From positions 114,576,001 to 114,640,000 of the forward strand of contig NC_042999.1 in the NCBI RefSeq assembly GCF_006345805.1: a stretch of 64,000 nt of DNA. Direction: 5' to 3'. The translations under genes were made by a program, and so were the position numbers. The notes beneath the pieces were generated by a model. That model was not told where the DNA came from. It did not search any database and saw only the letters and a list, made by a program, of their open reading frames with translations. How positions within the stretch are numbered: the stretch's first letter is position 1; the number at the start of each line of letters is the position of its first letter. Positions 8,271 to 61,178 of this stretch are shown here, one piece after another. The DNA comes from Octopus sinensis. Its lineage: Eukaryota.

Positions 8271-8370
8271 NNNNNNNNNNNNNNNNNNNNNNNNNNNNNN
8301 NNNNNNNNNNNNNNNNNNNNNNNNNNNNNNNNNNNNNNNNNNNNNNNNNNNNNNNNNNNNNNNNNNNNNN
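8271..8370. other. Assembly gap (100 N)
   Basis: Run of exactly 100 N, probably a placeholder of unknown size. Confidence 0.99.
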
Positions 8371-19682: not shown

Positions 19683-21709
19683 CCTTTCTCCAAAAAGTGG
19701 GGCAGATTTGCGTAAAGGAGCACAGCATCTTCTTCTCGTATAGATACTAGGACGATACTGACCGACTTGATGTGCAGTGAATCACAGAAAGGAAAGAAAG
19801 GCCTACTTCTGTTTTCCTTTTTCATTTTTCGTTACCATAGGAAGAAACGGTAGTGGTCATGATCCTTTAAATGGCTCCCGAGACTGGTGGGAAAGCGTGA
19901 GGGATGCATCCTCAAAACGCTTGCAACAAAGTGGGTTCTACTAAAGCACATAAGCACAAAGAGGTGTTAAACCAGGCGATTGATAAAATCAACCACATAA
20001 ATTGAGCACAGCGAGATTTGGAGTCTAAACGTAAATTGTAAGAACAGATACGGCAAGACTTTTTAACGATTCTACCAGACAACTCACCCAACCTGGAAGT
20101 TTGTTTATCGATCCCGAAAGAAGGCAAGTCAAAGTTTATATTAACGAGATTTGAACCCAGAACGCAAAAGTCCCGAATAAATACAAAGCATATATGTTTC
20201 TTTAACAACTCAGCCAAATCGCCATCTGTAGCCATTATGATTCATTTCAAAATTTGGCACAAGGCCAGCAATTTCGGGTAGTGGTCGTGGGGTGGGGGTA
20301 AGACGATTAAATCGACTCCAGTGCGAAACTGGTATTTATTTTATCGACCCCGAAAGAGTGAAAGGCAAAGTTGACCTAGGTGGAATTTGAACTCAGAACA
20401 TAAAGACGGACAAAATAATGCTAACGATCAGTCAGCTCGCCACCTTATGTAGCCATTATAATCGGTTTCAAATCTTGGCACGAGGTCAGCAGTTTTGGGA
20501 GAGGGGTAAGTCGATTACATCGATCTCATTGTTTAACTGATGCTTATTTTATCGACTCAGGAAGGATAAAAGACAATGTCAACCTCGGTAGTATTTGAAC
20601 TCAGAATGTAAAGGGGGAAGAAGTGCCACTAAGCATTTTATTCGGCATGCTAATGATTCAGCCACCTTTTCTACTCTAGCACAAGGTCCGAAAGTTTGGG
20701 GAAGGTGGCCAATCGATTAGATCGACACCAGTACGCAACTGGTACTTAATTGATCGACCTCGAAAGGATGAAAGACAAAGACGACCTCGGTGGAATTTGA
20801 ACTCAGAACGTAACGGTTGACGAAATACCTATTTCTTTACTACCCACAAGGGGCTTAACACAGAGAGGGCAAACAAGGACAGACAAACTGATTAAGTCGA
20901 TTATATCGACCTCAGTGCGTAACTGGTACTTATTTAATCGACCCTGAAAGGATGAAAGGCAAAGTCGACCTCGTCGGAATTTGAACTCAGAACGTCGCAG
21001 CCGACGAAATACCGCTAAGCATTTCGCCCGGCGTGCTAACGTTTCTTATTTCTTTATTGCCCACAAGGGGCTAAACATAGAGGGGACAAACAAGGACAGA
21101 AAAAGGGATTAAGATCGACCCCAGTGCGTGACTGGTACTTAGTTTATAAACCCCGAAAGGACGAAAGGCAAAGTCGACCGCGGCGGAACTTGAACTCAGA
21201 ACGTAGCGGCAGACGAAATACCGCTCGCCCGACGTGCTAACGATTCTGCCAGCTCGCTGCCTTATTTAGTCATTAGAATTAGAAATACTTATCTCGATGT
21301 CTTTAACCTGGCAGAACTGATATTTGAATTGTCTAGGTTCAAGTGATGTCTAAGAGTCTCTTCCATCTTATATATTTGTTCATTTATTTGTAATGTGTTT
21401 TGAGGCTGTAATGCAGGCATGGGCAACATTTATCGAGGAGCGAGCCGCATCACTAAAAGACTCATGATAGTTTTTCGGTGGGCGTGCCATTCAGAAAATC
21501 ACGCAACTCGCAGTTTACCCATGACTGCTATAAGGAACTCCTTTACCATACAGCTACTGGTTTCTAGGAAAGCGTACACTTAGATTATTAGTTGGGAGCC
21601 ATTTCGTTTCGTTATATTGACGTTATACGGTCAGTATCGTACTAGTATCTCTACGAGAAGAGGATGCTGGGCCCCTTTACGCAAATCTGCCCCACTTTTT
21701 GGAGAAAGG
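19683..21709. repeat. 82-bp inverted repeat pair (19683-19764 and 21628-21709)
   Basis: Manual alignment gives 77/82 identity in opposite orientation. Confidence 0.85.
20040..21265 (-). mobile_element. Head-to-tail array of about six SINE family A copies
   Basis: The GAATTTGAACTCAGAAC / GAAAGGCAAAGTCGACC / TATCGACCCCGAAAG motifs recur about every 200 bp, all on the minus strand. Confidence 0.9.
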
Positions 21710-23949: not shown

Positions 23950-24735
23950 TCATTCATTACATATATAATGATTTCATATATTGGCAGCAATTTCCGTGGT
24001 CGAGACAATGGAATTTACCATGCTACGCCAGACTTCACGGTCCATCATGGCATTACGGAGGTCCTGTTGCTGGATGCCCGTATCCCTGGAGATTACATCA
24101 GGGTAGGAGAGTGTGCGCCCTCTGGTATTGCGAGTAGATGGCTTCCAGAGAAGAAGAGTAGAAATTACTTCTTTTTCAGCTCTGCAACAATGTCCAGCAA
24201 ACTGAATTCTCCTACCTTTCACAAGAGATGACACAGGTGGTAGTTTCCCATATATTTGCATTTTGGTTGGATGGTGCTTCCACGAGAGATTTTGAGTTCT
24301 CATGAGGAGGCGAGTGTAGGTTCCATCCAACCGCCTCTCAAGCTTCTTTGATAGCGTCCAGGTTTCTGAGCCATATAGTAGAATTGGTTCGACTGTGGCT
24401 TTGAAGATTTCAAGTTTGAAGTCTCTACTTAGATTTGATGACCAGATCTTATGCATGTCATTACAGGCTGACCAGGCCATACCCTTTCTAGTTAGAAAGT
24501 CTTTTCCAGATGATGATATGTATAACCCAAGATATTTATAATCAGAAACCATATTTAAGGGCGCATTGTTGAGAGTATGGATGATGCAATCACTGTTGGA
24601 CAGGCACTTGTTTATGTATTCAGTTTTGGCCTCATTGAGGTAAAGACCTACACAATTTGAGGCTTGTTCAAGAGATTGTAAAAGAGACTGGGCATTGGAG
24701 AGAGAATCACTGATAAGAGCGATGGTATTGTTAAG
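23950..24735 (-). mobile_element. RTE-clade LINE, 5'-truncated, open RT C-terminal frame
   Basis: ORF 23974-24780 contains GLYLNEAKTE, YKYLG, FKATVEPILLYGSETWTL and DREVWR. Homology starts at IALIS, exactly where the YADD motif should be. Confidence 0.9.
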
Positions 24736-25094
24736 ACACAAAGTCTCATTCAAAAACTCATTATATTTACGCACTCTCAATCGTCAGGTCTACTTTCCCA
24801 ACATTTATAAATATAACTACTTCTTATCTAACATTTTTGCCAAAATTAATTACAAGCATATAAGTATAAATAAGTAAATAAATAAAGTCATGAACCTTAT
24901 AACTTTAAGACATAAAAACTTAAGGAATACAAACGGATATGAAATACGACTAAAAATATTTTATGGCTTGGTTGAGTTAATACCGTTTGGAGTTAATGAA
25001 GTTGTGGGTGTTTCTATCTCTAACACTATATATATATATGGTTGAAATTTACAGAAAAACAAAAGACGAAGACATGTGTATGTGTATGTATGTA

Positions 25095-31047: not shown

Positions 31048-31153
<106 letters not shown>

Positions 31154-32790: not shown

Positions 32791-33559
32791 TGAATGAACC
32801 CCAGTATATTAAACGTATTTATATCATTTATCCAAGTGGAATAAAAAGGCAAAAATCAACTTCGGCCGAACTTTAATGATGCTGAGAGCAGGACTAAGAA
32901 ATTAAATATTCTAAGAATTAAATATTCTAAGACATTTAGTAGAATTCCACCATTGCTTCACTTCCTACCTTTTGCATATTAGCAATAATAATTACCATGC
33001 ATTCCAGCATAAAAATACAATTTTAAACCTAATCTTCGCTTGACTAGAGTTGAACGTTGCCTCTATCTTCTACTGATAGCTAAAGACGACAATTAAACAC
33101 TGAGAAAATAGTTCATTTCGTTGCTGTTATGATAAACTGTCGTACCGAATTTGGACAAATGCGTTTGTTTTTTTCAATATTGATTTTTGCTTGAACTAGC
33201 CGGTTCTTTTGGTCAAACTATCGTATCTCCAGCTGCTTAAGATGTCAAGATATCAAAAATTGTCAAAGTGTAGTATGACGGTTTTGTAATGGAATGGTGA
33301 AAACTATTTTTTCGTTTTCTGAAAAAGCAACGTTTTGAACTTATGACACGTTTGCATAATAGCAACGATTTTGATTTCGAAATTTGCATGCAAACTGCTT
33401 ACTAAGGTTCAAATCCTGTTGTGGTCTCTTGTGCCTTTCATCCTTTTGGGGTCGATAAAATGACCACCAGTTGAGCTGTGGAGTCGATGTAATCGACTGC
33501 CCTACTCTCCCAAATTTATGGTCCTGTGCCTATAGTAGAAAGAATGATAACGCATTCCT

Positions 33560-33776
<217 letters not shown>

Positions 33777-34142
33777 AAGCAATCAGAAACTCATAGAACC
33801 AGGGCACTATCAGTTCGCATAAACACGAAATGTATGGAGTGGCAAAATGAAAATAAGAATACACAAGGAAAACACGATAACAGTTATTATCTTTATTATT
33901 TTACCACCGACCTTGCATGTCGGGATCGATAAAATATGTTCTAGTTGAGCATAGGAGTCTACAAATTCCAGAATTTCAAGCCTTGTGCTTATTGTAGAAA
34001 GCATTATTTATTGTTATCATTATATCACCGAGGATGACTTCATTTTTTATCCTTTCGTGGTTGATAACATTAAAGTCAAAGTTTCCCCCAAATTTCAGGC
34101 TTTGGGCCTATTGTAGAAAATATTGTTATTATTATCATTATT

Positions 34143-34450: not shown

Positions 34451-35393
34451 GTCCAGTTATGGGTTAATGTTGTGATAGCGATCACTTATACCCTATGGGA
34501 ACCGGGTATCCAGTCCTATGAGACCTAGAGTTCCAGACCGTAATGTCCAGGGGATTTGCTTTGTCAAATGTTCTACTGTTTCGTCTTGTTTAGCCCTCCC
34601 CCACTACGATCAGTCTTGGTTGAATTGACTTATAATCAAACACATTTCAATCATGACCAATCTGTTTTTTTTTTTGGACTATACTAAGGTCTACGTTATC
34701 TAGTGTGTTCTGTTCTTTCTCAATACCATAGGTTATGATTTGAGAAAAATGTGGTTGTTATTTGTAGCAGATCGAGTGACTACGTATATTCTTTCTCGTT
34801 CATTTCTTAGTAATTATTAAGGGGTCCAAAAGCATTCTATCACTGGCTTATGTGTCTTTTTAGGAATATTCTAAAACCTCTTTAACCAGTATGCTTCATT
34901 TGTTTCTCAAGAAAGTAGAAATGAGATTTGAGGGAGACTTTCCCACTATTTCTAGTAAGTCTAGCGACCATATAGAAATTCTTTCGTTATCTGGAATGAT
35001 GAAATAGCAGAAACGATGAAGTGTCGATGTCAACAACTCGCTATGACCATTTAGGTCCTTAGATTGATGAAATAATCTTTCATATTATAAAATGGTAGAT
35101 TGGCTGAACAATAAGAGCGTTCAGTAAGACCTGTCGAAGTCAACTTTGCCTTTTACAATTCCTGGGTCGATCATATAAAGGATCAAGATCCGATCCAAGG
35201 CGGTGGATTGGCGAAATTATTAAATATATGAGCATAATACCTTGCTGTATTTGTTCTGGCTCTTAAATTTCTTAGTTCACCGAGGATGATGCTGGTCGGG
35301 ACTGTATCGGATTTTGTTTTCTTCTCAGACAGCGTCGGTGGCGTGGAAGGAGAAAAATAAACTGCATATATTATTTGCCTTCCAAAGCTGGCG

Positions 35394-36777
35394 CACATTG
35401 TGCTCAGATTGGCTAATTCAGGAAAAGAAATTCATATCTGGGGTTAAAATAATCACCTGATAGTGGTTGGGGACTCGTTTGAACCACAATTTTAAGGGCT
35501 ATCAGCTAGAACCCAAATTATTGTTTGTCTTTGTTTATGGGGGTCTGGGTACAAATAATCAAATCAGGGCATATCGACCAAAATTGCCTCTTTGGTGAAT
35601 TGCGGTTAAAAGTGATTATCTCGTCAGCTTTCAATCAAGAAAAGCATCCATGACATCTTCAGAAGAATGTTCATCATGTCGCATCCAGCAATTGCTTCGA
35701 AACAACCCAGCCCAAGTTGTTCTGTTTGTGGTAAAGTTGATCACACAGCTCGTTCTTCAAAACTTAAGAAGATGTCTGCTTTGGCAGAACAATCGAGAAT
35801 CGAATCACTATATTACTGACTGGTCCATGTTACGCATATTTATTGTTTGACATTGTTGTTTCGATATTTGTTGTGAATAATAAGTGATGATTTGTCACAA
35901 TTTAGTGTAAATGACGGGGGAGGGGTAGTTTTCATTGTATTTTCCCTTTTTGTGGGGAAGGTGGGGTAGACTATGTTAAAGTTCCAATCCAGGGATTTGT
36001 TGGGTATAGTTTCTTTTTGTTATCTCGTGTTTTGGCCCTTCTTCAATTTCGGCGTAAGCAAGGCAAAATCCTCCAAGCCAGAACCTGACATTCCTAATCA
36101 GATTTTTACTCCATAAAATAGGTTAAATACCAAAATAAGTACTCATAAGATCAATTATTCCAAGAAATCTATTAGATTTTGAGTCCATTTTATGTTTCCT
36201 GCTTTATACTTGTTTAATCACGTCGGGGGTCAATAAATACCGATTTTTCCCAATTTTGGTTGGTTATGATGTTTGGTTCCCAAACTGGAATTATACTTTC
36301 TGTGTGGACTTTTAACCCCTTTGAGCTGATTTTTTTCCCACAGTTTACATAAAATGCTGGGGATGTCAAATAGGTTAGCCCTTAATATGTCGAAATTTGT
36401 AAGTATTTAAAAAAAATATGAAGTTTGAGGCGGTTTTACCAAAAATTTGGATATTTTTCCTGCATCCCCTATTTTTTCAAATTTCTCAAATTTATATTGG
36501 ACTATGCACTCTCGGCTGTAGCTTGACTGAAAGACAAATGCTTCTAAATAAGTTCAAACAGAGGTTTAAAATATTTTTTGTGAAAGAAAATATGATCAAT
36601 CATATGATACTCAAAAAAAAAAACCGTAAATTTCGTTAAAAATTGAGCTATAATTTATTTTAAACTCATGTTTTTTTGCTTTTTAATCTCTTGAGTTTAG
36701 AGAAACAGAAAATATGCATTTTAGACATCTGGGGGAAACTTTCAAAAATGATAAATTCCCACTCTGGGCACAATGTG
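35394..36777 (+). mobile_element. Non-autonomous Transib/RAG1-like DNA transposon (1384 bp)
   Basis: TIRs CACATTGTGCTCAGATTGG (from 35394) and CACATTGTGCCCAGAGTGG (reverse complement, ending 36777) are 17/19 identical. Flanks TGGCG and CAGCG are both one CpG deamination from CGGCG (5-bp TSD). Internal Transib/RAG1-like C-terminal coding remnant. Confidence 0.8.
35582..35819 (+). pseudogene. Transib/RAG1L-like transposase C-terminal remnant
   Basis: NCLFGELRLK [frameshift] LSRQLSIKKSIHDIFRRMFIMSHPAIASKQPSPSCSVCGKVDHTARSSKLKKMSALAEQSRIESLYY*. Resembles RAG1 NKLFRRFRKMNARQ, the Transib SRK.S.....ED(I/V)F.RLL.SSDP.ISS end, and the RAG1L Cx2Cx3GHx4C tail (compared from memory, not searched). Confidence 0.7.
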
Positions 36778-37215
36778 CAGCGAGCTGTCAGAATCGTTAG
36801 CGCGCTGGACAAGATGCTTAACGGCAGTTCGTTCATCTTTACGTTCTTAGTTTAAATTCCGTCGAGGCCGACTTTGCGCTTCATACTTTCGGAGTCGATA
36901 AATTCAGTATCAGTCAAGCGCTAGATTCGATATAATCGACTAGCCAACTCCTAAATTTCAAGCCTTGTACCTATAACAGAAAGGATTATTAACTTTCCAA
37001 AGGTGGCGAGCTGATAGAATCGTTAGCACGCCAGACAAAATGCTCATTGGTATTTCAATTTCTGAGCTCAAATTATGCTAAGGTCGACTTTGCTTTACAT
37101 CCTTTCGGGGTCGATAAAATAAGTACCAGTTGAGTAATTGGGGGGGGGGGGGCAATGTAATCGACTCCCCCACCACCACCACCACCACTCCAATTCAGAA
37201 CTTGTGTCTATAATA
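36778..37215 (+). mobile_element. Two tandem SINE family A copies; the first is interrupted at its head by the Transib-like element
   Basis: 36778 CAGCGAGCTGTCAGAATCGTTAGC continues CCAAAGCTGGCG (35382-35393). The second copy starts CCAAAGGTGGCGAGCTG near 37000. Confidence 0.85.
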
Positions 37216-37364
37216 GAAACAAATTTTAGTCTATGTAAAAGATATCAACCTTGTCCCGACTTGCAACTTGAAGAGGACTCCCTGTGTAAATTAGAAAGTT
37301 AACACTGACTGGCAAAGACCTTACGAGCGAAGAGCCTATTTGTTCCTTTAATATTGGAGTCAAG

Positions 37365-37570
37365 TTTTGGCACAAGGCTAGTCATTTCGAGGGAAGGGAT
37401 AATTTGATTAAATTGACCCCAATGCTCAACTGGTACTTATTTTATCGACCCCGAAAAAGATGAAAGGCAAAGTCAACCCCGGCAGCATTTGAACCCAGAA
37501 CGTAAAGTCGGATGAAATGCCGTGAAGCATTTTGCCTGGCGTGCTAACGATTTTGCTAGCTTGCCACTTA
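37365..37570 (-). mobile_element. SINE family A copy
   Basis: Family motifs in reverse complement. Confidence 0.8.
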
Positions 37571-40884: not shown

Positions 40885-41154
40885 ACCCTGTTACTTCCTC
40901 TTACTTCTGTCATTTGACTCACTCAAGTCTGGTACTTCTTCTATTGGTCTTTTTTTAGCAAGCCGCTAAGTCAAAGGGACGTAAACAAATACTGGTTGTC
41001 AAGCGATGTGAAGACAAACACGAAAACATGCGCTCGCATCCTTCCATCCATCCATCCATCTATCCATCCATCCATACATACATACATACATACATACATA
41101 CATACATACATACATACACACATACATACATATGTATATATATACATACGTACG

Positions 41155-41185
<31 letters not shown>

Positions 41186-41470
41186 GTACATATATACATA
41201 CGTACGTATATACATACATACATACATACATACATACATACATACATACAAACATACATACATACATACATACATACATACATACATACATACATACATA
41301 CTACATACATACATACATACATAAGACAGGCTTCCACACAAATCTCGCCTACCAAACTCACTCACACGCCACTGATCAGTCAGGTTCTGTAGCAGAAGGC
41401 ACTTCACCAAAGTGCCGCGTAGTGAGACTGAACCTAAAATCATGTGATTGCAAAGTGAACATCTTAACCT
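40885..41470 (-). mobile_element. SINE family B, old copy with about 290-bp internal (CATA)n/(CATC)n expansion
   Basis: 3' half about 40885-41030, 5' half about 41325-41470. Confidence 0.7.
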
Positions 41471-45600: not shown

Positions 45601-48190
45601 GCCTAGTGTGCCATATATTTGGGGTTTGTTTTGGTGTTGTACTAGTGAATGTCTAATACATTAAAAAAAAAGTTTGTTTTAAACCTTGGGATTACATAGA
45701 GAGTATTTTGCGTAGGATATGAGCAGTTCCCATGAGCACTATCTTTTGAATTTCTGCCATTTTGGGGTTTCCTGGTATTTGAGTTAGGTAGGAATCAGTC
45801 CCTTTCGCTATCATTCCCAGAGCACCTATGACAACAGGTATTGTTTTAGTCTTCAGCTTCCACATTTTGCTGATTTCTATTTCAAGATCTTTATATTTGC
45901 TCAGTTTTTGGTAGGTCTTGACAGATACGTTTATATCGATTGGAACAGTCATATCAATGAGGAGGCATGTTCTTTGTCTGAAGTCTTTCAATATGATGTC
46001 TGGCCTATTTGCATCTATCTTTCGGTCAGTTTGAATGGGGAAGTTCCAGAGGAGTGAGATGTGGTCATTTTCAAGCACTGGAGGTGGATTGTGTTCCCAC
46101 CAGTTTTTTTCATGGGGCAAATCCAGGTTTTTGCAAATTACCCAGTGAATATATTGTGAAGCTCTATCGTGTCTGTTGAGGTACTCTGTAGGCGCTAGAA
46201 GACTGCACTTGGAGACCACATGGTCAATGGTTTCATTGTGTTGCTGGCATATACGACATGTTGGGCTACTGCCATTCTTTAATATGTTGGCCTGGTAGTT
46301 TCTTGTTGGTAGGCATTGATCTTGAGCTGCTATGATAAACCCCTCTCTTTCAGATTTTAAGCCAGAGGCCATTGGCCATTGATGGGTCAGGGCTTTGTCA
46401 ATATCTGCATTATTCGCTCTCTTTGGGTATTTGCCATAGAGAGGTTTTTCTTGCCATTTATTATTCAGAATATCTAAGGCCGCAGTTTTGGCACGAGTTT
46501 TCATGCGCCTAGCTTTTTCTGTGCTTGTTTCTTGTATGTCTATCTCTAATTCCGAAATTGGTTGTATTCGGAATTCACTTAGATATTCCTTTGCCTGTTT
46601 TGTTACTGAGTATGATGCTTTCTTGTTTTCATGTTTTGAGACAAGTTTTAACATCCAGTCCTCAGAGTTTTTCAGGTAGGTGTCTAGGCCAATTGTAGCA
46701 ATCTTCATTGTTATTGCCAGTTGCAAAAGAACACGACCTCTCTCTTTTCTTGGCAGATAAAGTCGTTCTGTATCTGCCTTAGGGTGGTGCATTCTATGCA
46801 TTGTCAACAGTTTTCTTATTTTTCTGTCGAGCTGACATATTTCAGTAATTGACCAGTTAACGATATTGAAACTGTAAGTCACGACTGGTATGCCTAATGC
46901 ATTGATCGCTTCGATCCTGTTTCTGGCATTCAGCTCTGTCTTGAGTATTGCTCTCACTCTTCGATAGCATTCTCTCCTGATCCTTTCCTTCATCTCTGAA
47001 TGCCTTATTCCGTTCCCTTCAATTACACCTAGGTACTTGTAGCTCTCCGCTGGGTCTAGTTCTTTTATGACATTCTGCTGGTCAAGGTTAACGTTAGATG
47101 TTTCTGTCATTTTTCCTTTGATAAAGGTAGCTTTTGCACATTTATCGAGGCCGAATTGCATTCTGATGTCGTCACTGAATTGTTTGACTATCGCTAGTAA
47201 GCCCTTGAGTTGTTGGTCATTTTTTGCAAAGAGCTTTAAATCATCCATGTAAATGAGATGATTTATACTTTTATCAAACATTTTATACCCGTACTGCGCG
47301 TCATTGAGCAGTTTTGAGAGCGGTATTAAAGCTAAACAAAAGAGGAGTGGTGACAGTGAGTCACCCTGGAAAATGCCACACGAAATTTTTACATCATCAG
47401 CATTTAGGAATTCATTGTCACTGTTCAGAGTTAGTGTGGTTCTCCATGATCTCATACTTACAGTCAAAACGTTTCGCAGAGTAGGTGCTATCTTATACAT
47501 TTCCAGGCATTTCCTAATCCAGCTATGTGGTAGGCTATCAAAAGCCTTTTTATAGTCTATCCAGGCTATTGATAAGTTTTTGTGTCGTTTGTGACAATCT
47601 TCTAAGATCATCTTATTGATGAGTAGTTGATCTTTACAGATGTAGGATCCACGTTTACATCCTTTCTGTTCATTAGGGAATATGCTGCTGTTTGTTAAAA
47701 AACTATAAGTATATTCTGTCAGGACAGATGTTAGCGTTTTGTACATAGTTGTTAAGCAGGTTATGGGTCTATAGTTTTTTGGTTCATTTGTTTCTTCACT
47801 TTTTGGAAGCAGGAATGTTAACCCATTAACTAGCCAAGGAGGCATCCTACTAGGGTGTTTCAAAACATCATTGTACAGTTCTGTTAGCAGTTCATGGCTC
47901 TCTGGGAAGGCATTCAGCCAGAAGTTAGGAATTTTATCCTTTCCTGGAGACTTCCATTTGCTTGACCTCCTGAGAGCAGATCTTATATCTTCTACCTTGA
48001 CACCCTCACACTTTTGCTCTTCTAAGGGGTCCAGTTCTGTAGATATTCTGTCAATCCAGGGGGCCTTTTCGTTGTGTGTTTTTTCTTCTGCCCAAATTTT
48101 ATTCCAAAATCCCTGCACTTCTTCTTTTGATGGTACAGACCTTGCAGTAAACGCTGTTTTCCCTATCTTCCTGTAAAAATTATTGGGGTT
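45601..48190 (-). mobile_element. R4/Dong-clade non-LTR retrotransposon, 5'-truncated, in a TAA/CAA tract
   Basis: Coding region plus about 90-bp 3'UTR ending GCACACTAGGC|ATAACAACAAC; the 5' junction is in (TAA)n at about 48191-48206. Confidence 0.95.
45692..48190 (-). CDS. Reverse transcriptase plus CCHC zinc finger plus restriction-like endonuclease (832 aa, N-terminally truncated)
   Basis: NYRPITCL, WIDYKKAFDS, QGDSLSP, YMDD, YKYLG, CRICQQHNETIDHVVSKC, RHD, RPD, K..KY. No stops or frameshifts. Confidence 0.95.
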   Translation of the reverse strand, partial: NPNNFYRKIGKTAFTARSVPSKEEVQGFWNKIWAEEKTHNEKAPWIDRISTELDPLEEQKCEGVKVEDIRSALRRSSKWKSPGKDKIPNFWLNAFPESHELLTELYNDVLKHPSRMPPWLVNGLTFLLPKSEETNEPKNYRPITCLTTMYKTLTSVLTEYTYSFLTNSSIFPNEQKGCKRGSYICKDQLLINKMILEDCHKRHKNLSIAWIDYKKAFDSLPHSWIRKCLEMYKIAPTLRNVLTVSMRSWRTTLTLNSDNEFLNADDVKISCGIFQGDSLSPLLFCLALIPLSKLLNDAQYGYKMFDKSINHLIYMDDLKLFAKNDQQLKGLLAIVKQFSDDIRMQFGLDKCAKATFIKGKMTETSNVNLDQQNVIKELDPAESYKYLGVIEGNGIRHSEMKERIRRECYRRVRAILKTELNARNRIEAINALGIPVVTYSFNIVNWSITEICQLDRKIRKLLTMHRMHHPKADTERLYLPRKERGRVLLQLAITMKIATIGLDTYLKNSEDWMLKLVSKHENKKASYSVTKQAKEYLSEFRIQPISELEIDIQETSTEKARRMKTRAKTAALDILNNKWQEKPLYGKYPKRANNADIDKALTHQWPMASGLKSEREGFIIAAQDQCLPTRNYQANILKNGSSPTCRICQQHNETIDHVVSKCSLLAPTEYLNRHDRASQYIHWVICKNLDLPHEKNWWEHNPPPVLENDHISLLWNFPIQTDRKIDANRPDIILKDFRQRTCLLIDMTVPIDINVSVKTYQKLSKYKDLEIEISKMWKLKTKTIPVVIGALGMIAKGTDSYLTQIPGNPKMAEIQKIVLMGTAHILRKILSM

Positions 48191-48208
48191 ATTATTATTA
48201 TTATTATA

Positions 48209-48595
48209 TAGGCGTAGGAGTGGCTGTGTGGTAAGTAGCTTGCTTACGAACCACATGGTTCCGGGTTCAGTCCCACTGCGTAGCATATTGTCTTCTACTA
48301 TATAACCTCGGGCCGACCAAAGCCTTGTGAGTGGATTTGGTAGACGGAAACTGAAAGAAGCCCGTCGTATATATATATATATATGTATGTGTGTATATGT
48401 TTGTGTGTCTGTTTGTCCCCCCAACATCGCTTGACAACCGATGCTGGTGTGTTTACGTCCCCGTAACTTAGCGGTTCGGCAAAAGAGGCCGATAGAATAA
48501 GTACTAGGCTTACTAAGTCCTGGGGTCGATTTGCTCGACTAAAGACGCTGCTCCAGCAGGATCACAGTCAAATGACTAACATAAGTACAAGAGAG
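48209..48595 (+). mobile_element. SINE family B, full length
   Basis: Near-consensus copy directly at the 5' junction of the R4/Dong element. Confidence 0.92.
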
Positions 48596-53561: not shown

Positions 53562-53684
<123 letters not shown>

Positions 53685-53749
53685 GTTCTATCTGTGTGCA
53701 GCCCTGTGTGGCTAATAAAGAAACATATCTACATACATACGTACATACA

Positions 53750-55914: not shown

Positions 55915-56325
55915 TATTTCTTTATTGCCTACAGGGGGCTAAACATAGAGGGGACAAACAAGGACAGACAAACGGATTAAGTCGATTACATAGACCCCAG
56001 TGCGTAACTCGTACTTATTTAATCGACCCCGAAAGGATGAAAGACAAAGTTGGCCCCAACAGAATTTGAACTCAGAACGTAACGGCAGACGAAATACCTA
56101 TTTCTTTACTGCCCACGAGGGGCTACACACAGAGGGGAGAAACAAGGACAGACAAACAGATTAAGTCGATTATATCGACCCCAGTGCGTAACTGGTACTT
56201 ATTTAATCGACCCCGAAAGGATGAAAGGCAAAGCTGACTTCAGCGGAATTTGAACTCAGAACGTAGAGGCAGACGAAATACGGCAAAGCATTTCGCCCGA
56301 CGTGCTAACTTTTCTACCAGCTTGT
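55915..56325 (-). mobile_element. Two tandem SINE family A copies at the end of the LINE remnant
   Basis: Family motifs repeated twice on the minus strand. Confidence 0.88.
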
Positions 56326-60350: not shown

Positions 60351-60389
60351 TGACACGCTAAGAATTTCAGGTGAAGTCCACAGTTCAAT

Positions 60390-61178
60390 ATTACGATTGC
60401 ATCTGGAACAATATCAGAGACCTGGGTGTAATTGTTGATGACGATCTCAGTTGGAGTGCACACATCAACAAGAAGGTCGATATAGCTCGTAGGATGAGTT
60501 CCTGGATCTTAAGAACTTTCCGGTCAAGAGAACAAGGTGTCATCATACCACTTTTCTCCTCCTTTGTACGGCCACACCTCGAATACTGCTGCCCACTGTG
60601 GTCTCCCCATACAAGACAAAACATCTCGAGGATTGAGTCACCCCAGAGGGCACTCACAAAACGAATTGAAGGCATGGCTGCTCTCGATTATTGGGATCGC
60701 CTTAAAGCCTTGAAACTTTACTCTCTCCAGCGTCGCCGTGAGCGGTACATCATTTGTATGATGTGGAGAATATACCGCCAATTTTGCCCAAACGACCTGA
60801 ACATTAGCTTCAAGGTTCATCCAAGACTGGGACCACGGGCCATACGTCCCCTGCCCAATTCAAGATCACAGCATACATGTACACTGCAACATAATTTCTT
60901 TTCCTCAACAGGCCTTGCGCTATTTAACATTGTCCCGAAAGAGATCAAAGAGGAAAAGGATCCCATCAACTTTAAACGGAGTCTGGATAGATTCCTTCAA
61001 AGAATACCAGATAAGCCACCCATAATTGGATACAACTCACCCAACAAGAACTCACTACTTGAATGGACCATAAACAAAACTTGACTTAAACAGGATTCGA
61101 ATAATCCTATCAGGTGGTGCTATTAAGTTAGACATGGCCTGGACCAATCTTTGGTCGAAACATATCTAAGTTTATCTA

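What the first reader, a model, noticed from the sequence alone, without database searches (positions are those of the whole stretch)
35582..35819. Transposase remnant combines a Transib-type core end with a RAG1L-type Cx2Cx3GHx4C tail
Seen: a 68-codon open frame (35616-35819) LSRQLSIKKSIHDIFRRMFIMSHPAIASKQPSPSCSVCGKVDHTARSS..., preceded across a frameshift by NCLFGELRLK; the ORF track missed it. Established (from memory): RAG1 has NKLFRRFRKMNARQ after the third catalytic Glu; Transibs end with SRK.S.....ED(I/V)F.RLL.SSDP.ISS; invertebrate RAG1L proteins such as amphioxus ProtoRAG carry a C-terminal Cx2Cx3GHx4C motif that vertebrate RAG1 lacks. Here CSVCGKVDHTARSS matches that motif with G>D (GGT>GAT) and C>S (TGT>TCT), each a single substitution. 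Inference: the parent element could sit between classical Transib and RAG1L, which bears on RAG origins. The catalytic Glu is not recognisable in this copy.
Basis: partly seen in the sequence, partly recalled or inferred. Interest (0 to 1): 0.85.

Follow-up and report, generated by a model that had tools for sequence, protein, structure and literature searches.

The report
Gutted Transib transposon with zinc-knuckle tail
The open frame is the last 66-70 codons of a Transib (RAG1-related) transposase, left inside a 1.4-kb internally deleted transposon copy; Transibs with this RAG1L-like zinc-knuckle tail are already described, so it is a real but ordinary transposon fossil.

Summary
The 67-codon open frame at 35616-35819 is real. 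It is the C-terminal tail of a Transib-superfamily transposase. It matches the last ~70 residues of ~700-aa proteins (best E 1e-16 against 1.8 billion proteins). A profile of those proteins hits the solved HzTransib structure (E 2e-35), then BbeRAG1L (5e-16), then RAG1 (1e-10).

No other part of the transposase is in the window. The tail lies in a 1,384-bp internal-deletion derivative (35394-36777). This is bounded by 15-bp inverted repeats, CACATTGTGCTCAGA and CACATTGTGCCCAGA. They match the CACAGTG-type termini of complete relatives, one of which has a perfect 5-bp target-site duplication.

- G>D at motif position 8 is supported: 33 of 34 relatives have G.
- "C>S" is not supported. The codon is TCA, and most close relatives lack Cys there, with His two or three residues later (Leu here).

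Transibs that combine a Transib core with the RAG1L-type CCGHC tail are published as Subgroup I Transibs (Tao et al. 2022) and were proposed there as Transib/RAG1L intermediates. The family profile scores highest against a Subgroup I member (196 bits). This is a new, dead member of a known kind. Interest is low.

The parts
35389..35393 (.). Left flank TGGCG, candidate 5-bp target-site duplication
   Evidence: It matches the right flank CAGCG at only 3 of 5 positions, so this is inconclusive.
35394..35408 (+). 5' terminal inverted repeat CACATTGTGCTCAGA (RSS-heptamer-like tip)
   Evidence: The pattern occurs only twice in the window, on opposite strands. It matches the tip CACAGTGCGCCCAGA of the complete element L007 at 12 of 15 positions. 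Homology to L008 starts exactly here.
35409..35519 (+). 5' subterminal, non-coding region kept from the parent element
   Evidence: Window 35394-35483 matches L008 7506-7592 (77%, E 8e-13). Window 35425-35489 matches L009 4547-4612 (74%). Window 35435-35519 matches L002 3106-3190.
35520..35603 (+).
   Evidence: No protein or DNA homology to any relative. Part of it (35531-35596) weakly resembles a unit of an unrelated tandem-repeat protein, P0006.
35604..35819 (+). Transposase C-terminal tail (family profile positions 651-721 of 722) with its ancestral stop codon at 35817-35819
   Evidence: Identity is 63% to P0001 and P0060 and 57% to the 702-aa P0003. Firm homology starts at 35619.
35718..35765 (+). 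Degenerate zinc knuckle C35-x2-C38-x3-D42(consensus G)-H43-x6-L50(His in most close relatives)
   Evidence: motif table; tail types; codons GAT, TCA, CTT.
35820..36762 (+). 3' untranslated and subterminal region
   Evidence: Window 36637-36779 matches L009 9385-9526 (66%). Window 36672-36790 matches L002 7045-7158. The subterminal TGGAATTTAT...ATTTTTG blocks are shared with L009, L003 and L002.
36763..36777 (-). 3' terminal inverted repeat (reverse complement CACATTGTGCCCAGA)
   Evidence: It is 14 of 15 complementary to the 5' TIR.
36778..36782 (.). Right flank CAGCG, candidate target-site duplication
   Evidence: It matches the left flank at 3 of 5 positions, so this is inconclusive.

Best explanation
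Window 35394-36777 is a dead, non-autonomous Transib DNA transposon, made from an autonomous element of about 3.7-5 kb by an internal deletion.

It keeps both 15-bp terminal inverted repeats with RSS-heptamer-like tips, about 110-210 bp of 5' subterminal sequence, the last 66-70 codons of the transposase with the original stop codon, and about 940 bp of 3' sequence. The first ~650 codons are gone, including the whole DDE catalytic core.

The parent family is a Transib lineage of the kind Tao et al. 2022 call Subgroup I. It has a single transposase of about 700 aa, with:
- a GRPK-type N-terminal DNA-binding motif;
- a DDE RNase-H core;
- a RAG1-like segment after the CxxC zinc site that HzTransib lacks;
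- a C-terminal zinc-knuckle tail (CTT1/CTT*).

By analogy with BbeRAG1L (an inference from the literature, not tested here), the tail clamps subterminal TIR DNA. The enzyme would cut by nick-hairpin and insert with a 5-bp duplication.

The copy in the window cannot make a transposase. At most it could once have been moved in trans. The peptide is a fossil with two departures from the family knuckle: Gly to Asp, and Leu where most relatives have His.
For: Shown:
- Tail homology, E 1e-16 to 1e-12 to the C-termini of 700-aa proteins.
- The family profile hits HzTransib 6pqn at 125 bits (E 2e-35), BbeRAG1L 6b40 at 62 bits and RAG1 at about 44 bits, with the D, D and E positions aligned.
- Pfam RAG1 PF12940 is above its gathering score for P0013 (34 bits) and P0042 (27 bits).
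- The profile scores 196 bits end to end against MleTransib_3931.
- Only one transposase fragment exists in all 64 kb.
- The TIR pair occurs exactly twice, inverted, flanking the fragment.
- The same tips occur on complete relatives. L007 (3,715 bp, one ORF) starts with CACAGTGCGCCCAGA and ends with its exact reverse complement. L009 has CACAGTGTGCCCAG tips and a perfect CATTT/CATTT duplication.
- The window is collinear with L008, L009 and L002 at the 5' end, the tail and the 3' end.
- L008 is another internal-deletion derivative.

Inferred: the DNA-clamp role of the tail and the nick-hairpin mechanism, from Martin 2020/2023 and Tao 2022 citing Zhang 2019.
Against: - The target-site duplication in the window is only 3 of 5 (TGGCG vs CAGCG).
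- No second copy of this element is in the window.
- The nearest relatives are only about 75% identical in DNA and come from other organisms. The deletion breakpoint is therefore placed only to within 35520-35618.
- The Subgroup I assignment rests on profile scores, tail type and alignment length, not on a phylogeny. The MleTransib sequence was read from a machine-read PDF supplement.
- Most close relatives carry a CCHH-like knuckle, not the canonical CCGHC.
Confidence: 0.88

Rival explanations
1. One reading: the remnant derives from a previously unrecognised intermediate between classical Transib and RAG1L, which would bear newly on RAG origins.
For: The tail does join a Transib-type core end to a RAG1L-type knuckle. 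The family also has a GRPK motif, consensus CACAGTG heptamers and a RAG1-like segment after the CxxC site. All 34 family members found came from metagenome or read-archive assemblies plus one EukProt 'hypothetical protein', none with a functional name.
Against: This combination is published as Subgroup I Transibs and was already proposed as the intermediate (Tao 2022; Martin 2023). The family profile scores 196 bits against a published Subgroup I member. The window copy adds only 67 decayed codons.
Confidence: 0.08
2. It is a remnant of a RAG1L gene from a two-gene RAGL transposon, not of a Transib.
For: The knuckle and the residues before it also align weakly with oyster and acorn-worm RAG1L C-termini (17 and 7 bits; sequences).
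Against: The profile scores twice as high against HzTransib as against BbeRAG1L. Relatives are about 700 aa with no RING or N-terminal zinc-finger region in Pfam scans. The complete 3.7-kb elements hold one gene and have no room for a RAG2-like gene.
Confidence: 0.03
3. It is a chance open frame with a gag-type or MULE-type CCHC knuckle, unrelated to Transib.
For: The peptide alone gives no Pfam RAG1 hit and only weak CCHC-protein hits in the PDB (E 0.8-4). The first word-indexed protein search found nothing.
Against: The whole 66 residues, not just the knuckle, align to Transib C-termini at E 1e-16. The stop codon position is conserved. The flanking TIRs match family tips.
Confidence: 0.01
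4. The tail has been co-opted as an expressed exon or small zinc-binding peptide of the host.
For: 67 codons remain open in an AT-rich, stop-prone sequence, and an internal ATG gives a 50-aa ORF.
Against: The frame opens directly after two stop codons at the deletion junction. Knuckle positions have degenerated (G>D, and no fourth ligand). No expression or orthologue data are available. The context is repeat-rich, with no gene nearby.
Confidence: 0.03

Closest known systems
Subgroup I Transib transposons (Tao et al. 2022, Natl Sci Rev; e.g. MleTransib_3931 of Mnemiopsis leidyi, Transib-9_HMp of Hydra)
   Same: - A single transposase of about 700 aa.
- A Transib core with a RAG1-like segment after the CxxC site.
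- A zinc-knuckle CTT1 tail followed by an acidic/hydrophobic end: ...EEDALVSSEFF in Mle, ...AEQSRIESLYY here.
- CAC-type TIRs that differ between the two ends beyond 15 bp.
- The family profile scores 196 bits against Mle.
   Different: - The window copy is an internally deleted fossil with only the tail.
- In 34 of 49 family tails the fourth zinc ligand is not the canonical Cys but a His two or three residues later.
- Formal phylogenetic membership was not tested.
HzTransib of Helicoverpa zea (PDB 6pqn and others), a classical Subgroup II Transib
   Same: It is the best solved-structure match of the family profile (125 bits). The ...SRKKSRQASNEDILNMLIISSDPLISF end aligns without gaps with the window's SRQLSIKKSIHDIFRRMFIMSHPAIAS.
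   Different: HzTransib is shorter (a 497-aa chain). It has 17 residues where the family has about 49 profile positions after the CxxC site. The match does not continue into the knuckle (it ends at HzTransib residue 464, envelope 472, of 497). Tao 2022 assign it a different tail, CTT2.
BbeRAG1L / invertebrate RAG1L CTT* (Cx2Cx3GHx4C; Huang 2016, Zhang 2019, Martin 2020)
   Same: The knuckle has the same spacing and the invariant G-H. In BbeRAG1L the tail is a DNA clamp on subterminal TIR sequence and is needed for cleavage.
   Different: RAG1L proteins are about 1,000-1,100 aa with RING and N-terminal zinc fingers, and they work with a RAG2L partner. The family here has neither. Profile score is only 62 bits.
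Non-autonomous internal-deletion derivatives of DNA transposons
   Same: Intact TIRs, subterminal regions and a piece of the transposase gene, with the catalytic part deleted. L008 is a second, independently deleted example in this family.
   Different: Nothing unusual. No evidence of amplification in this window (a single copy).

Membership tests
Transib superfamily | Transposase homologous to the RAG1 core / HzTransib | tested here: met
   The window tail hits the family profile at 65-69 bits. The family profile hits HzTransib at E 2e-35 and RAG1 at E 1e-10. Pfam RAG1 is above its cut-off for P0013 and P0042.
Transib superfamily | DDE catalytic triad present | tested here: not met
   Absent from the window copy because profile positions 1-650 are deleted. 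In full-length relatives the GxDGSG, SMIDGK and SEQxxEAWNK positions are invariant and align to the RAG1 and BbeRAG1L catalytic residues. The family has the triad; this copy does not.
Transib superfamily | TIRs starting 5'-CAC with an RSS-heptamer-like tip | tested here: met
   Window: CACATTG... at 35394 and its complement ending at 36777. Relatives: CACAGTG tips.
Transib superfamily | 5-bp target-site duplication | tested here: inconclusive
   Window flanks TGGCG vs CAGCG match at 3 of 5. Relative L009 has a perfect CATTT/CATTT.
Transib superfamily | A single transposase gene with no RAG2-like partner | tested here: met
   The complete elements L006 and L007 (3.7 kb) and the contigs L003-L005 carry one long called gene each. 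Not testable on the window copy itself.
Subgroup I Transib (Tao et al. 2022) | CTT1 (CCGHC zinc-knuckle) C-terminal tail | tested here: met
   The knuckle is present in 49 family tails: 12 canonical Cx2Cx3GHx4C, 34 with His instead of the last Cys, 3 other. The window has C, C and H, but D for G and no fourth ligand.
Subgroup I Transib (Tao et al. 2022) | [quoted passage not shown] | tested here: inconclusive
   Relatives have about 49 profile positions between the CxxC site and the next helix, against 17 residues in HzTransib. They align continuously with RAG1 and MleTransib there. This rests on alignment length only; no structure was predicted.
Subgroup I Transib (Tao et al. 2022) | Asymmetric TIRs | tested here: inconclusive
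   The two ends are identical for 14-15 bp and then differ. In L009 an AAATTTGG block lies 13 bp after the heptamer at the 5' end and 21 bp after it at the 3' end. Judged by eye on a few copies.
Subgroup I Transib (Tao et al. 2022) | Phylogenetic placement with Subgroup I, closer to RAG1L than Subgroup II is | not tested
   Only profile scores are available: MleTransib 196 bits, HzTransib 125 bits, BbeRAG1L 62 bits.
RAG1L (RAGL transposon) | Paired convergent RAG2L kelch gene, and N-terminal RING and zinc-finger region | tested here: not met
   One gene per 3.7-kb element. The proteins are about 700 aa with no RING or other N-terminal zinc-finger hits in Pfam.
Retroviral/gag-type CCHC zinc knuckle (Pfam PF00098) | Cx2Cx4Hx4C within a gag/nucleocapsid context | tested here: not met
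   No PF00098 hit for the window peptide, even at E<=10. Relatives give only sub-threshold hits of 10-17 bits against a cut-off of 20.8. The context is a transposase C-terminus.

The most novel reading that the evidence does not exclude
The relatives recovered here form a sizeable clade of Transibs that seems largely unannotated. It includes about 50 tails and more than 15 intact ~700-aa ORFs, from marine metagenome and read-archive assemblies. Every member with a recorded source came from these assemblies, apart from one EukProt 'hypothetical protein'.

The clade combines a consensus RSS heptamer (CACAGTG), end-to-end TIR asymmetry, a GRPK N-terminal motif and a variant tail, Cx2Cx3GHx6-7H (CCHH), in place of the canonical CCGHC. 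If the CCHH tail is an undescribed, functional subtype of the CTT1 DNA clamp, and the clade is the sister of RAGL transposases, it would give a tractable single-protein model of the pre-RAG2 state. L007 has an intact ORF and perfect TIRs.
Probability: 0.2. Interest if true: 0.45.

Novelty: new member of a known kind. Interest (0 to 1): 0.2.

Why it matters
It matters little for RAG origins. Transibs with the RAG1L-type tail, the proposed intermediates, are already in the literature, and this copy keeps only 67 decayed codons.

Its practical value is for annotation. Window 35394-36777 should be masked as a non-autonomous Transib.

The follow-up also turned up intact relatives that could serve specialists as test material for how the C-terminal knuckle reads TIR DNA. 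L007/P0007, for example, has perfect CACAGTG TIRs. Many of these relatives carry a His-for-Cys variant of the knuckle.

Tried and rejected
1. Three-frame translations of 34.4-35.9 kb against Pfam and PDB gave nothing.

2. The word-indexed protein search with the stitched peptide found nothing. The exhaustive HMMER search was what found the family.

3. I looked for more of the transposase upstream and across the whole window by tblastn and with the family HMM in six frames. There is none.

- It does align without gaps to one distant relative, P0027 (NKLIRRFRER), and to Mle's NKLLRRYRTR.
- The closest relatives have a linker three residues longer, and DNA alignments there are at shuffle level.
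- I rejected it as a chance extension.

5. A generic inverted-repeat scan on L002 did not reveal TIRs. They were found only after complete contig L007 gave the tip sequence.

6. I checked whether the relatives' loci come from the same organism as the window, using shared SINEs. No repeats are shared.

7. PF26100, listed as a precomputed domain for some relatives, could not be interpreted. It did not appear in the local Pfam scan.

8. A literature search for Transib in cephalopods found nothing specific.

Full report
**Observation.** Window 35616-35819 (+) is an uninterrupted 67-codon frame ending in TGA. It starts right after two in-frame stops, and its first ATG is at 35667. That is why a mechanical ORF list shows only a 50-aa ORF. 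The string CSVCGKVDHTARSS is at 35718-35759. NCLFGELRLK is present in another frame at 35582-35611. The region has no second copy in the window. It lies between SINE-like repeats and microsatellites.

**Is it more than chance?**
- The peptide alone gave no Pfam RAG1 hit and only weak CCHC noise in the PDB. The word-indexed protein search also found nothing.
- An exhaustive phmmer search of 1.84 billion representative proteins gave 38 hits at E<=1e-3 and five at E<=1e-10. All align to residues 35-101 of the stitched query, which is the open frame.
- Where the hit protein is full length (702-719 aa), the match is at its extreme C-terminus, and the stop codon position is conserved. Identity is 63% to P0001 and P0060 and 57% to P0003.

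**What the relatives are.**
- Eight full-length relatives align over their whole length (A1).
- The A1 profile hits solved structures in this order: HzTransib 6pqn (125 bits, E 2e-35), BbeRAG1L 6b40 (62 bits, E 5e-16), then many RAG1 entries (about 36-44 bits, E 1e-10 to 2e-8).
- The invariant GxDGSG, SMIDGK and SEQxxEAWNK blocks align with the catalytic D, D and E of RAG1 and RAG1L.
- Pfam RAG1 (PF12940) is above its gathering score for P0013 and P0042, and just below it for P0053.
- The HzTransib end SRKKSRQASNEDILNMLIISSDPLISF aligns without gaps with the window's SRQLSIKKSIHDIFRRMFIMSHPAIAS.
- The relatives are single ~700-aa proteins on contigs of about 3-4 kb, with one long gene each. 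They have no RING or N-terminal zinc-finger region and no room for a RAG2-like gene. They are Transibs, not RAG1L.

**The element in the window.**
- The A1 HMM, run on all six frames of the 64-kb window, finds only 35604-35813, which is profile positions 651-721 of 722. tblastn agrees. The first ~650 codons, including the DDE core, are therefore absent from this window.
- Complete contig L007 (3,715 bp, encoding P0007) begins with CACAGTGCGCCCAGA and ends with the exact reverse complement.
- Searching the window with that tip found CACATTGTGCTCAGA at 35394-35408 and, inverted, CACATTGTGCCCAGA at 36763-36777. The pattern occurs only at these two places in the window, on opposite strands, bracketing the tail.
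- Homology to related loci is collinear in three blocks: the 5' end (35394-35483 vs L008; 35425-35489 vs L009; 35435-35519 vs L002), the coding tail, and the 3' end (36637-36779 vs L009; 36672-36790 vs L002). Homology to L008 starts exactly at the TIR tip.
- L009 is a near-full-length pseudogenised copy of about 5 kb, with CACAGTGTGCCCAG tips and a perfect 5-bp duplication, CATTT/CATTT. L008 is another, differently deleted derivative.
- The window flanks TGGCG and CAGCG match at only 3 of 5 positions.
- I conclude that 35394-36777 is a 1,384-bp internal-deletion, non-autonomous Transib. The tail is what the deletion happened to spare.

- *The frameshift-joined NCLFGELRLK.* It extends a gapless BLAST alignment to one distant relative, P0027 (NKLIRRFRER). 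The closest relatives, however, read WNK[HY][VL]RSFQSGPA[AS]RSRQ, with a linker three residues longer. DNA alignments of the upstream 300 bp to L001 and L002 score within the shuffle range, and forced alignments to L008, L009 and L002 are gap-ridden. The string lies in the deletion-junction interval. I treat it as chance.
- *G>D.* 33 of 34 relatives have Gly at motif position 8.
- *C>S.* Position 14 is codon TCA, not TCT, and is two steps from Cys. Only 12 of 34 relatives in the first set, and 12 of 49 in the larger set, have Cys there. 34 of 49 have a His two or three residues further on, giving Cx2Cx3GHx6-7H. Most of the closest relatives of the window are of this His type. The window has Leu (CTT, one step from CAT) at that place, as does its closest long relative P0060. 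Ser is therefore ancestral for this lineage. The lost ligand, if any, is the His.

**Comparison with what is known.**
- Martin et al. 2020 confirm that Cx2Cx3GHx4C defines CTT* of invertebrate RAG1L.
- Tao et al. 2022 split Transibs into Subgroup II (classical, including HzTransib, with tail type CTT2) and Subgroup I. Subgroup I keeps CTT1 (the same as CTT*), an alpha11-alpha12-equivalent region and asymmetric TIRs. [quoted passage not shown]
- Martin et al. [quoted passage not shown]
- I took the Subgroup I protein MleTransib_3931 from Tao's supplement (machine-read text, so a few letters may be wrong). The A1 profile scores 196 bits against it, in one alignment running through the knuckle and the acidic/hydrophobic end. 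That is higher than against HzTransib.
- The family also has about 49 profile positions after the CxxC zinc site where HzTransib has 17. These align continuously with RAG1 and Mle.
- It has a G(G/R)RPK motif, which HMMER places on RAG1's GGRPR, although that stretch is not significant on its own.
- Its TIRs are identical for 14-15 bp and then differ between the ends.
- All this fits Subgroup I. A formal phylogeny was not run.

**Mechanism.**
- *Shown:* the copy lacks the catalytic core and cannot encode a transposase. It keeps nearly matched TIRs (14 of 15 complementary).
- *Inferred from the family and the literature:* the parent enzyme is a DDE transposase that cuts by nick-hairpin and inserts with 5-bp duplications. 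Its C-terminal knuckle binds subterminal TIR DNA, as CTT* does in BbeRAG1L. A copy like this could only have moved in trans.

**Verdict.** This is a new, dead member of a known kind. The only mildly new point is the widespread His-for-Cys variant of the knuckle in this clade, whose members here carry no functional name. No step needed referral.

Noticed in passing
relatives P0001-P0057 (tails); window 35757-35765: Most tails in this Transib clade (34 of 49) replace the last Cys of Cx2Cx3GHx4C with a His two or three residues later (GHTARS-x-[RK]-H). 12 of 49 keep the canonical Cys. I did not find this CCHH-like variant mentioned in the papers read.
   Followed up: partly
L007 1-3715 (also L006): An apparently complete, intact Transib: a 716-aa ORF and perfect 15-bp TIRs whose tip is the consensus RSS heptamer CACAGTG. 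The same protein was assembled independently from two sequencing runs.
   Followed up: partly
relatives, alignment A1 columns ~125-137: A conserved G(G/R)RPKxxLGDNP motif near the N-terminus. HMMER aligns it with RAG1's nonamer-binding GGRPRQHL, but that stretch is not significant on its own.
   Followed up: no
window 35531-35596: This stretch, translated, resembles (about 50%) the repeating unit of P0006, a 1,163-aa protein made of about 21 tandem copies. P0006 is probably a translated satellite. Its relation to the transposon's subterminal region is unknown.
   Followed up: no
window 45692-48427 (-): A 911-aa open frame with a reverse-transcriptase domain (RVT_1, E 1e-27) and a weak zf-RVT match. 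This is a non-LTR retrotransposon ORF2-like gene.
   Followed up: partly
window 23974-24780 (-) and 60371-61084 (+): Two further long ORFs (268 and 237 aa) that look like C-terminal parts of retroelement polymerases. Neither has a significant Pfam domain.
   Followed up: partly
window 20830-21225, 55915-56281, 36780-37565, 33400-33550 and others: A SINE-like repeat of about 180-210 bp (TATTTCTTTACTRCCCACAAGGGGCTAAACACAGAG...) occurs many times in both orientations, sometimes in tandem. One copy abuts the 3' TIR of the Transib remnant.
   Followed up: no
window 33560-33777, 31049-31153, 53562-53693, 41065-41323 and many others: The window is unusually dense in microsatellites, including (TATC)n, (CATA)n, (TA)n, (AAT)n and (GAA)n. 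There is a 100-N assembly gap at 8271-8370. Overall GC is 35%.
   Followed up: no
L009 11519-13434: A Ty1/copia-type LTR-retrotransposon polyprotein (gag, integrase, RVT_2 domains) lies about 2 kb from the full-length Transib relative.
   Followed up: no
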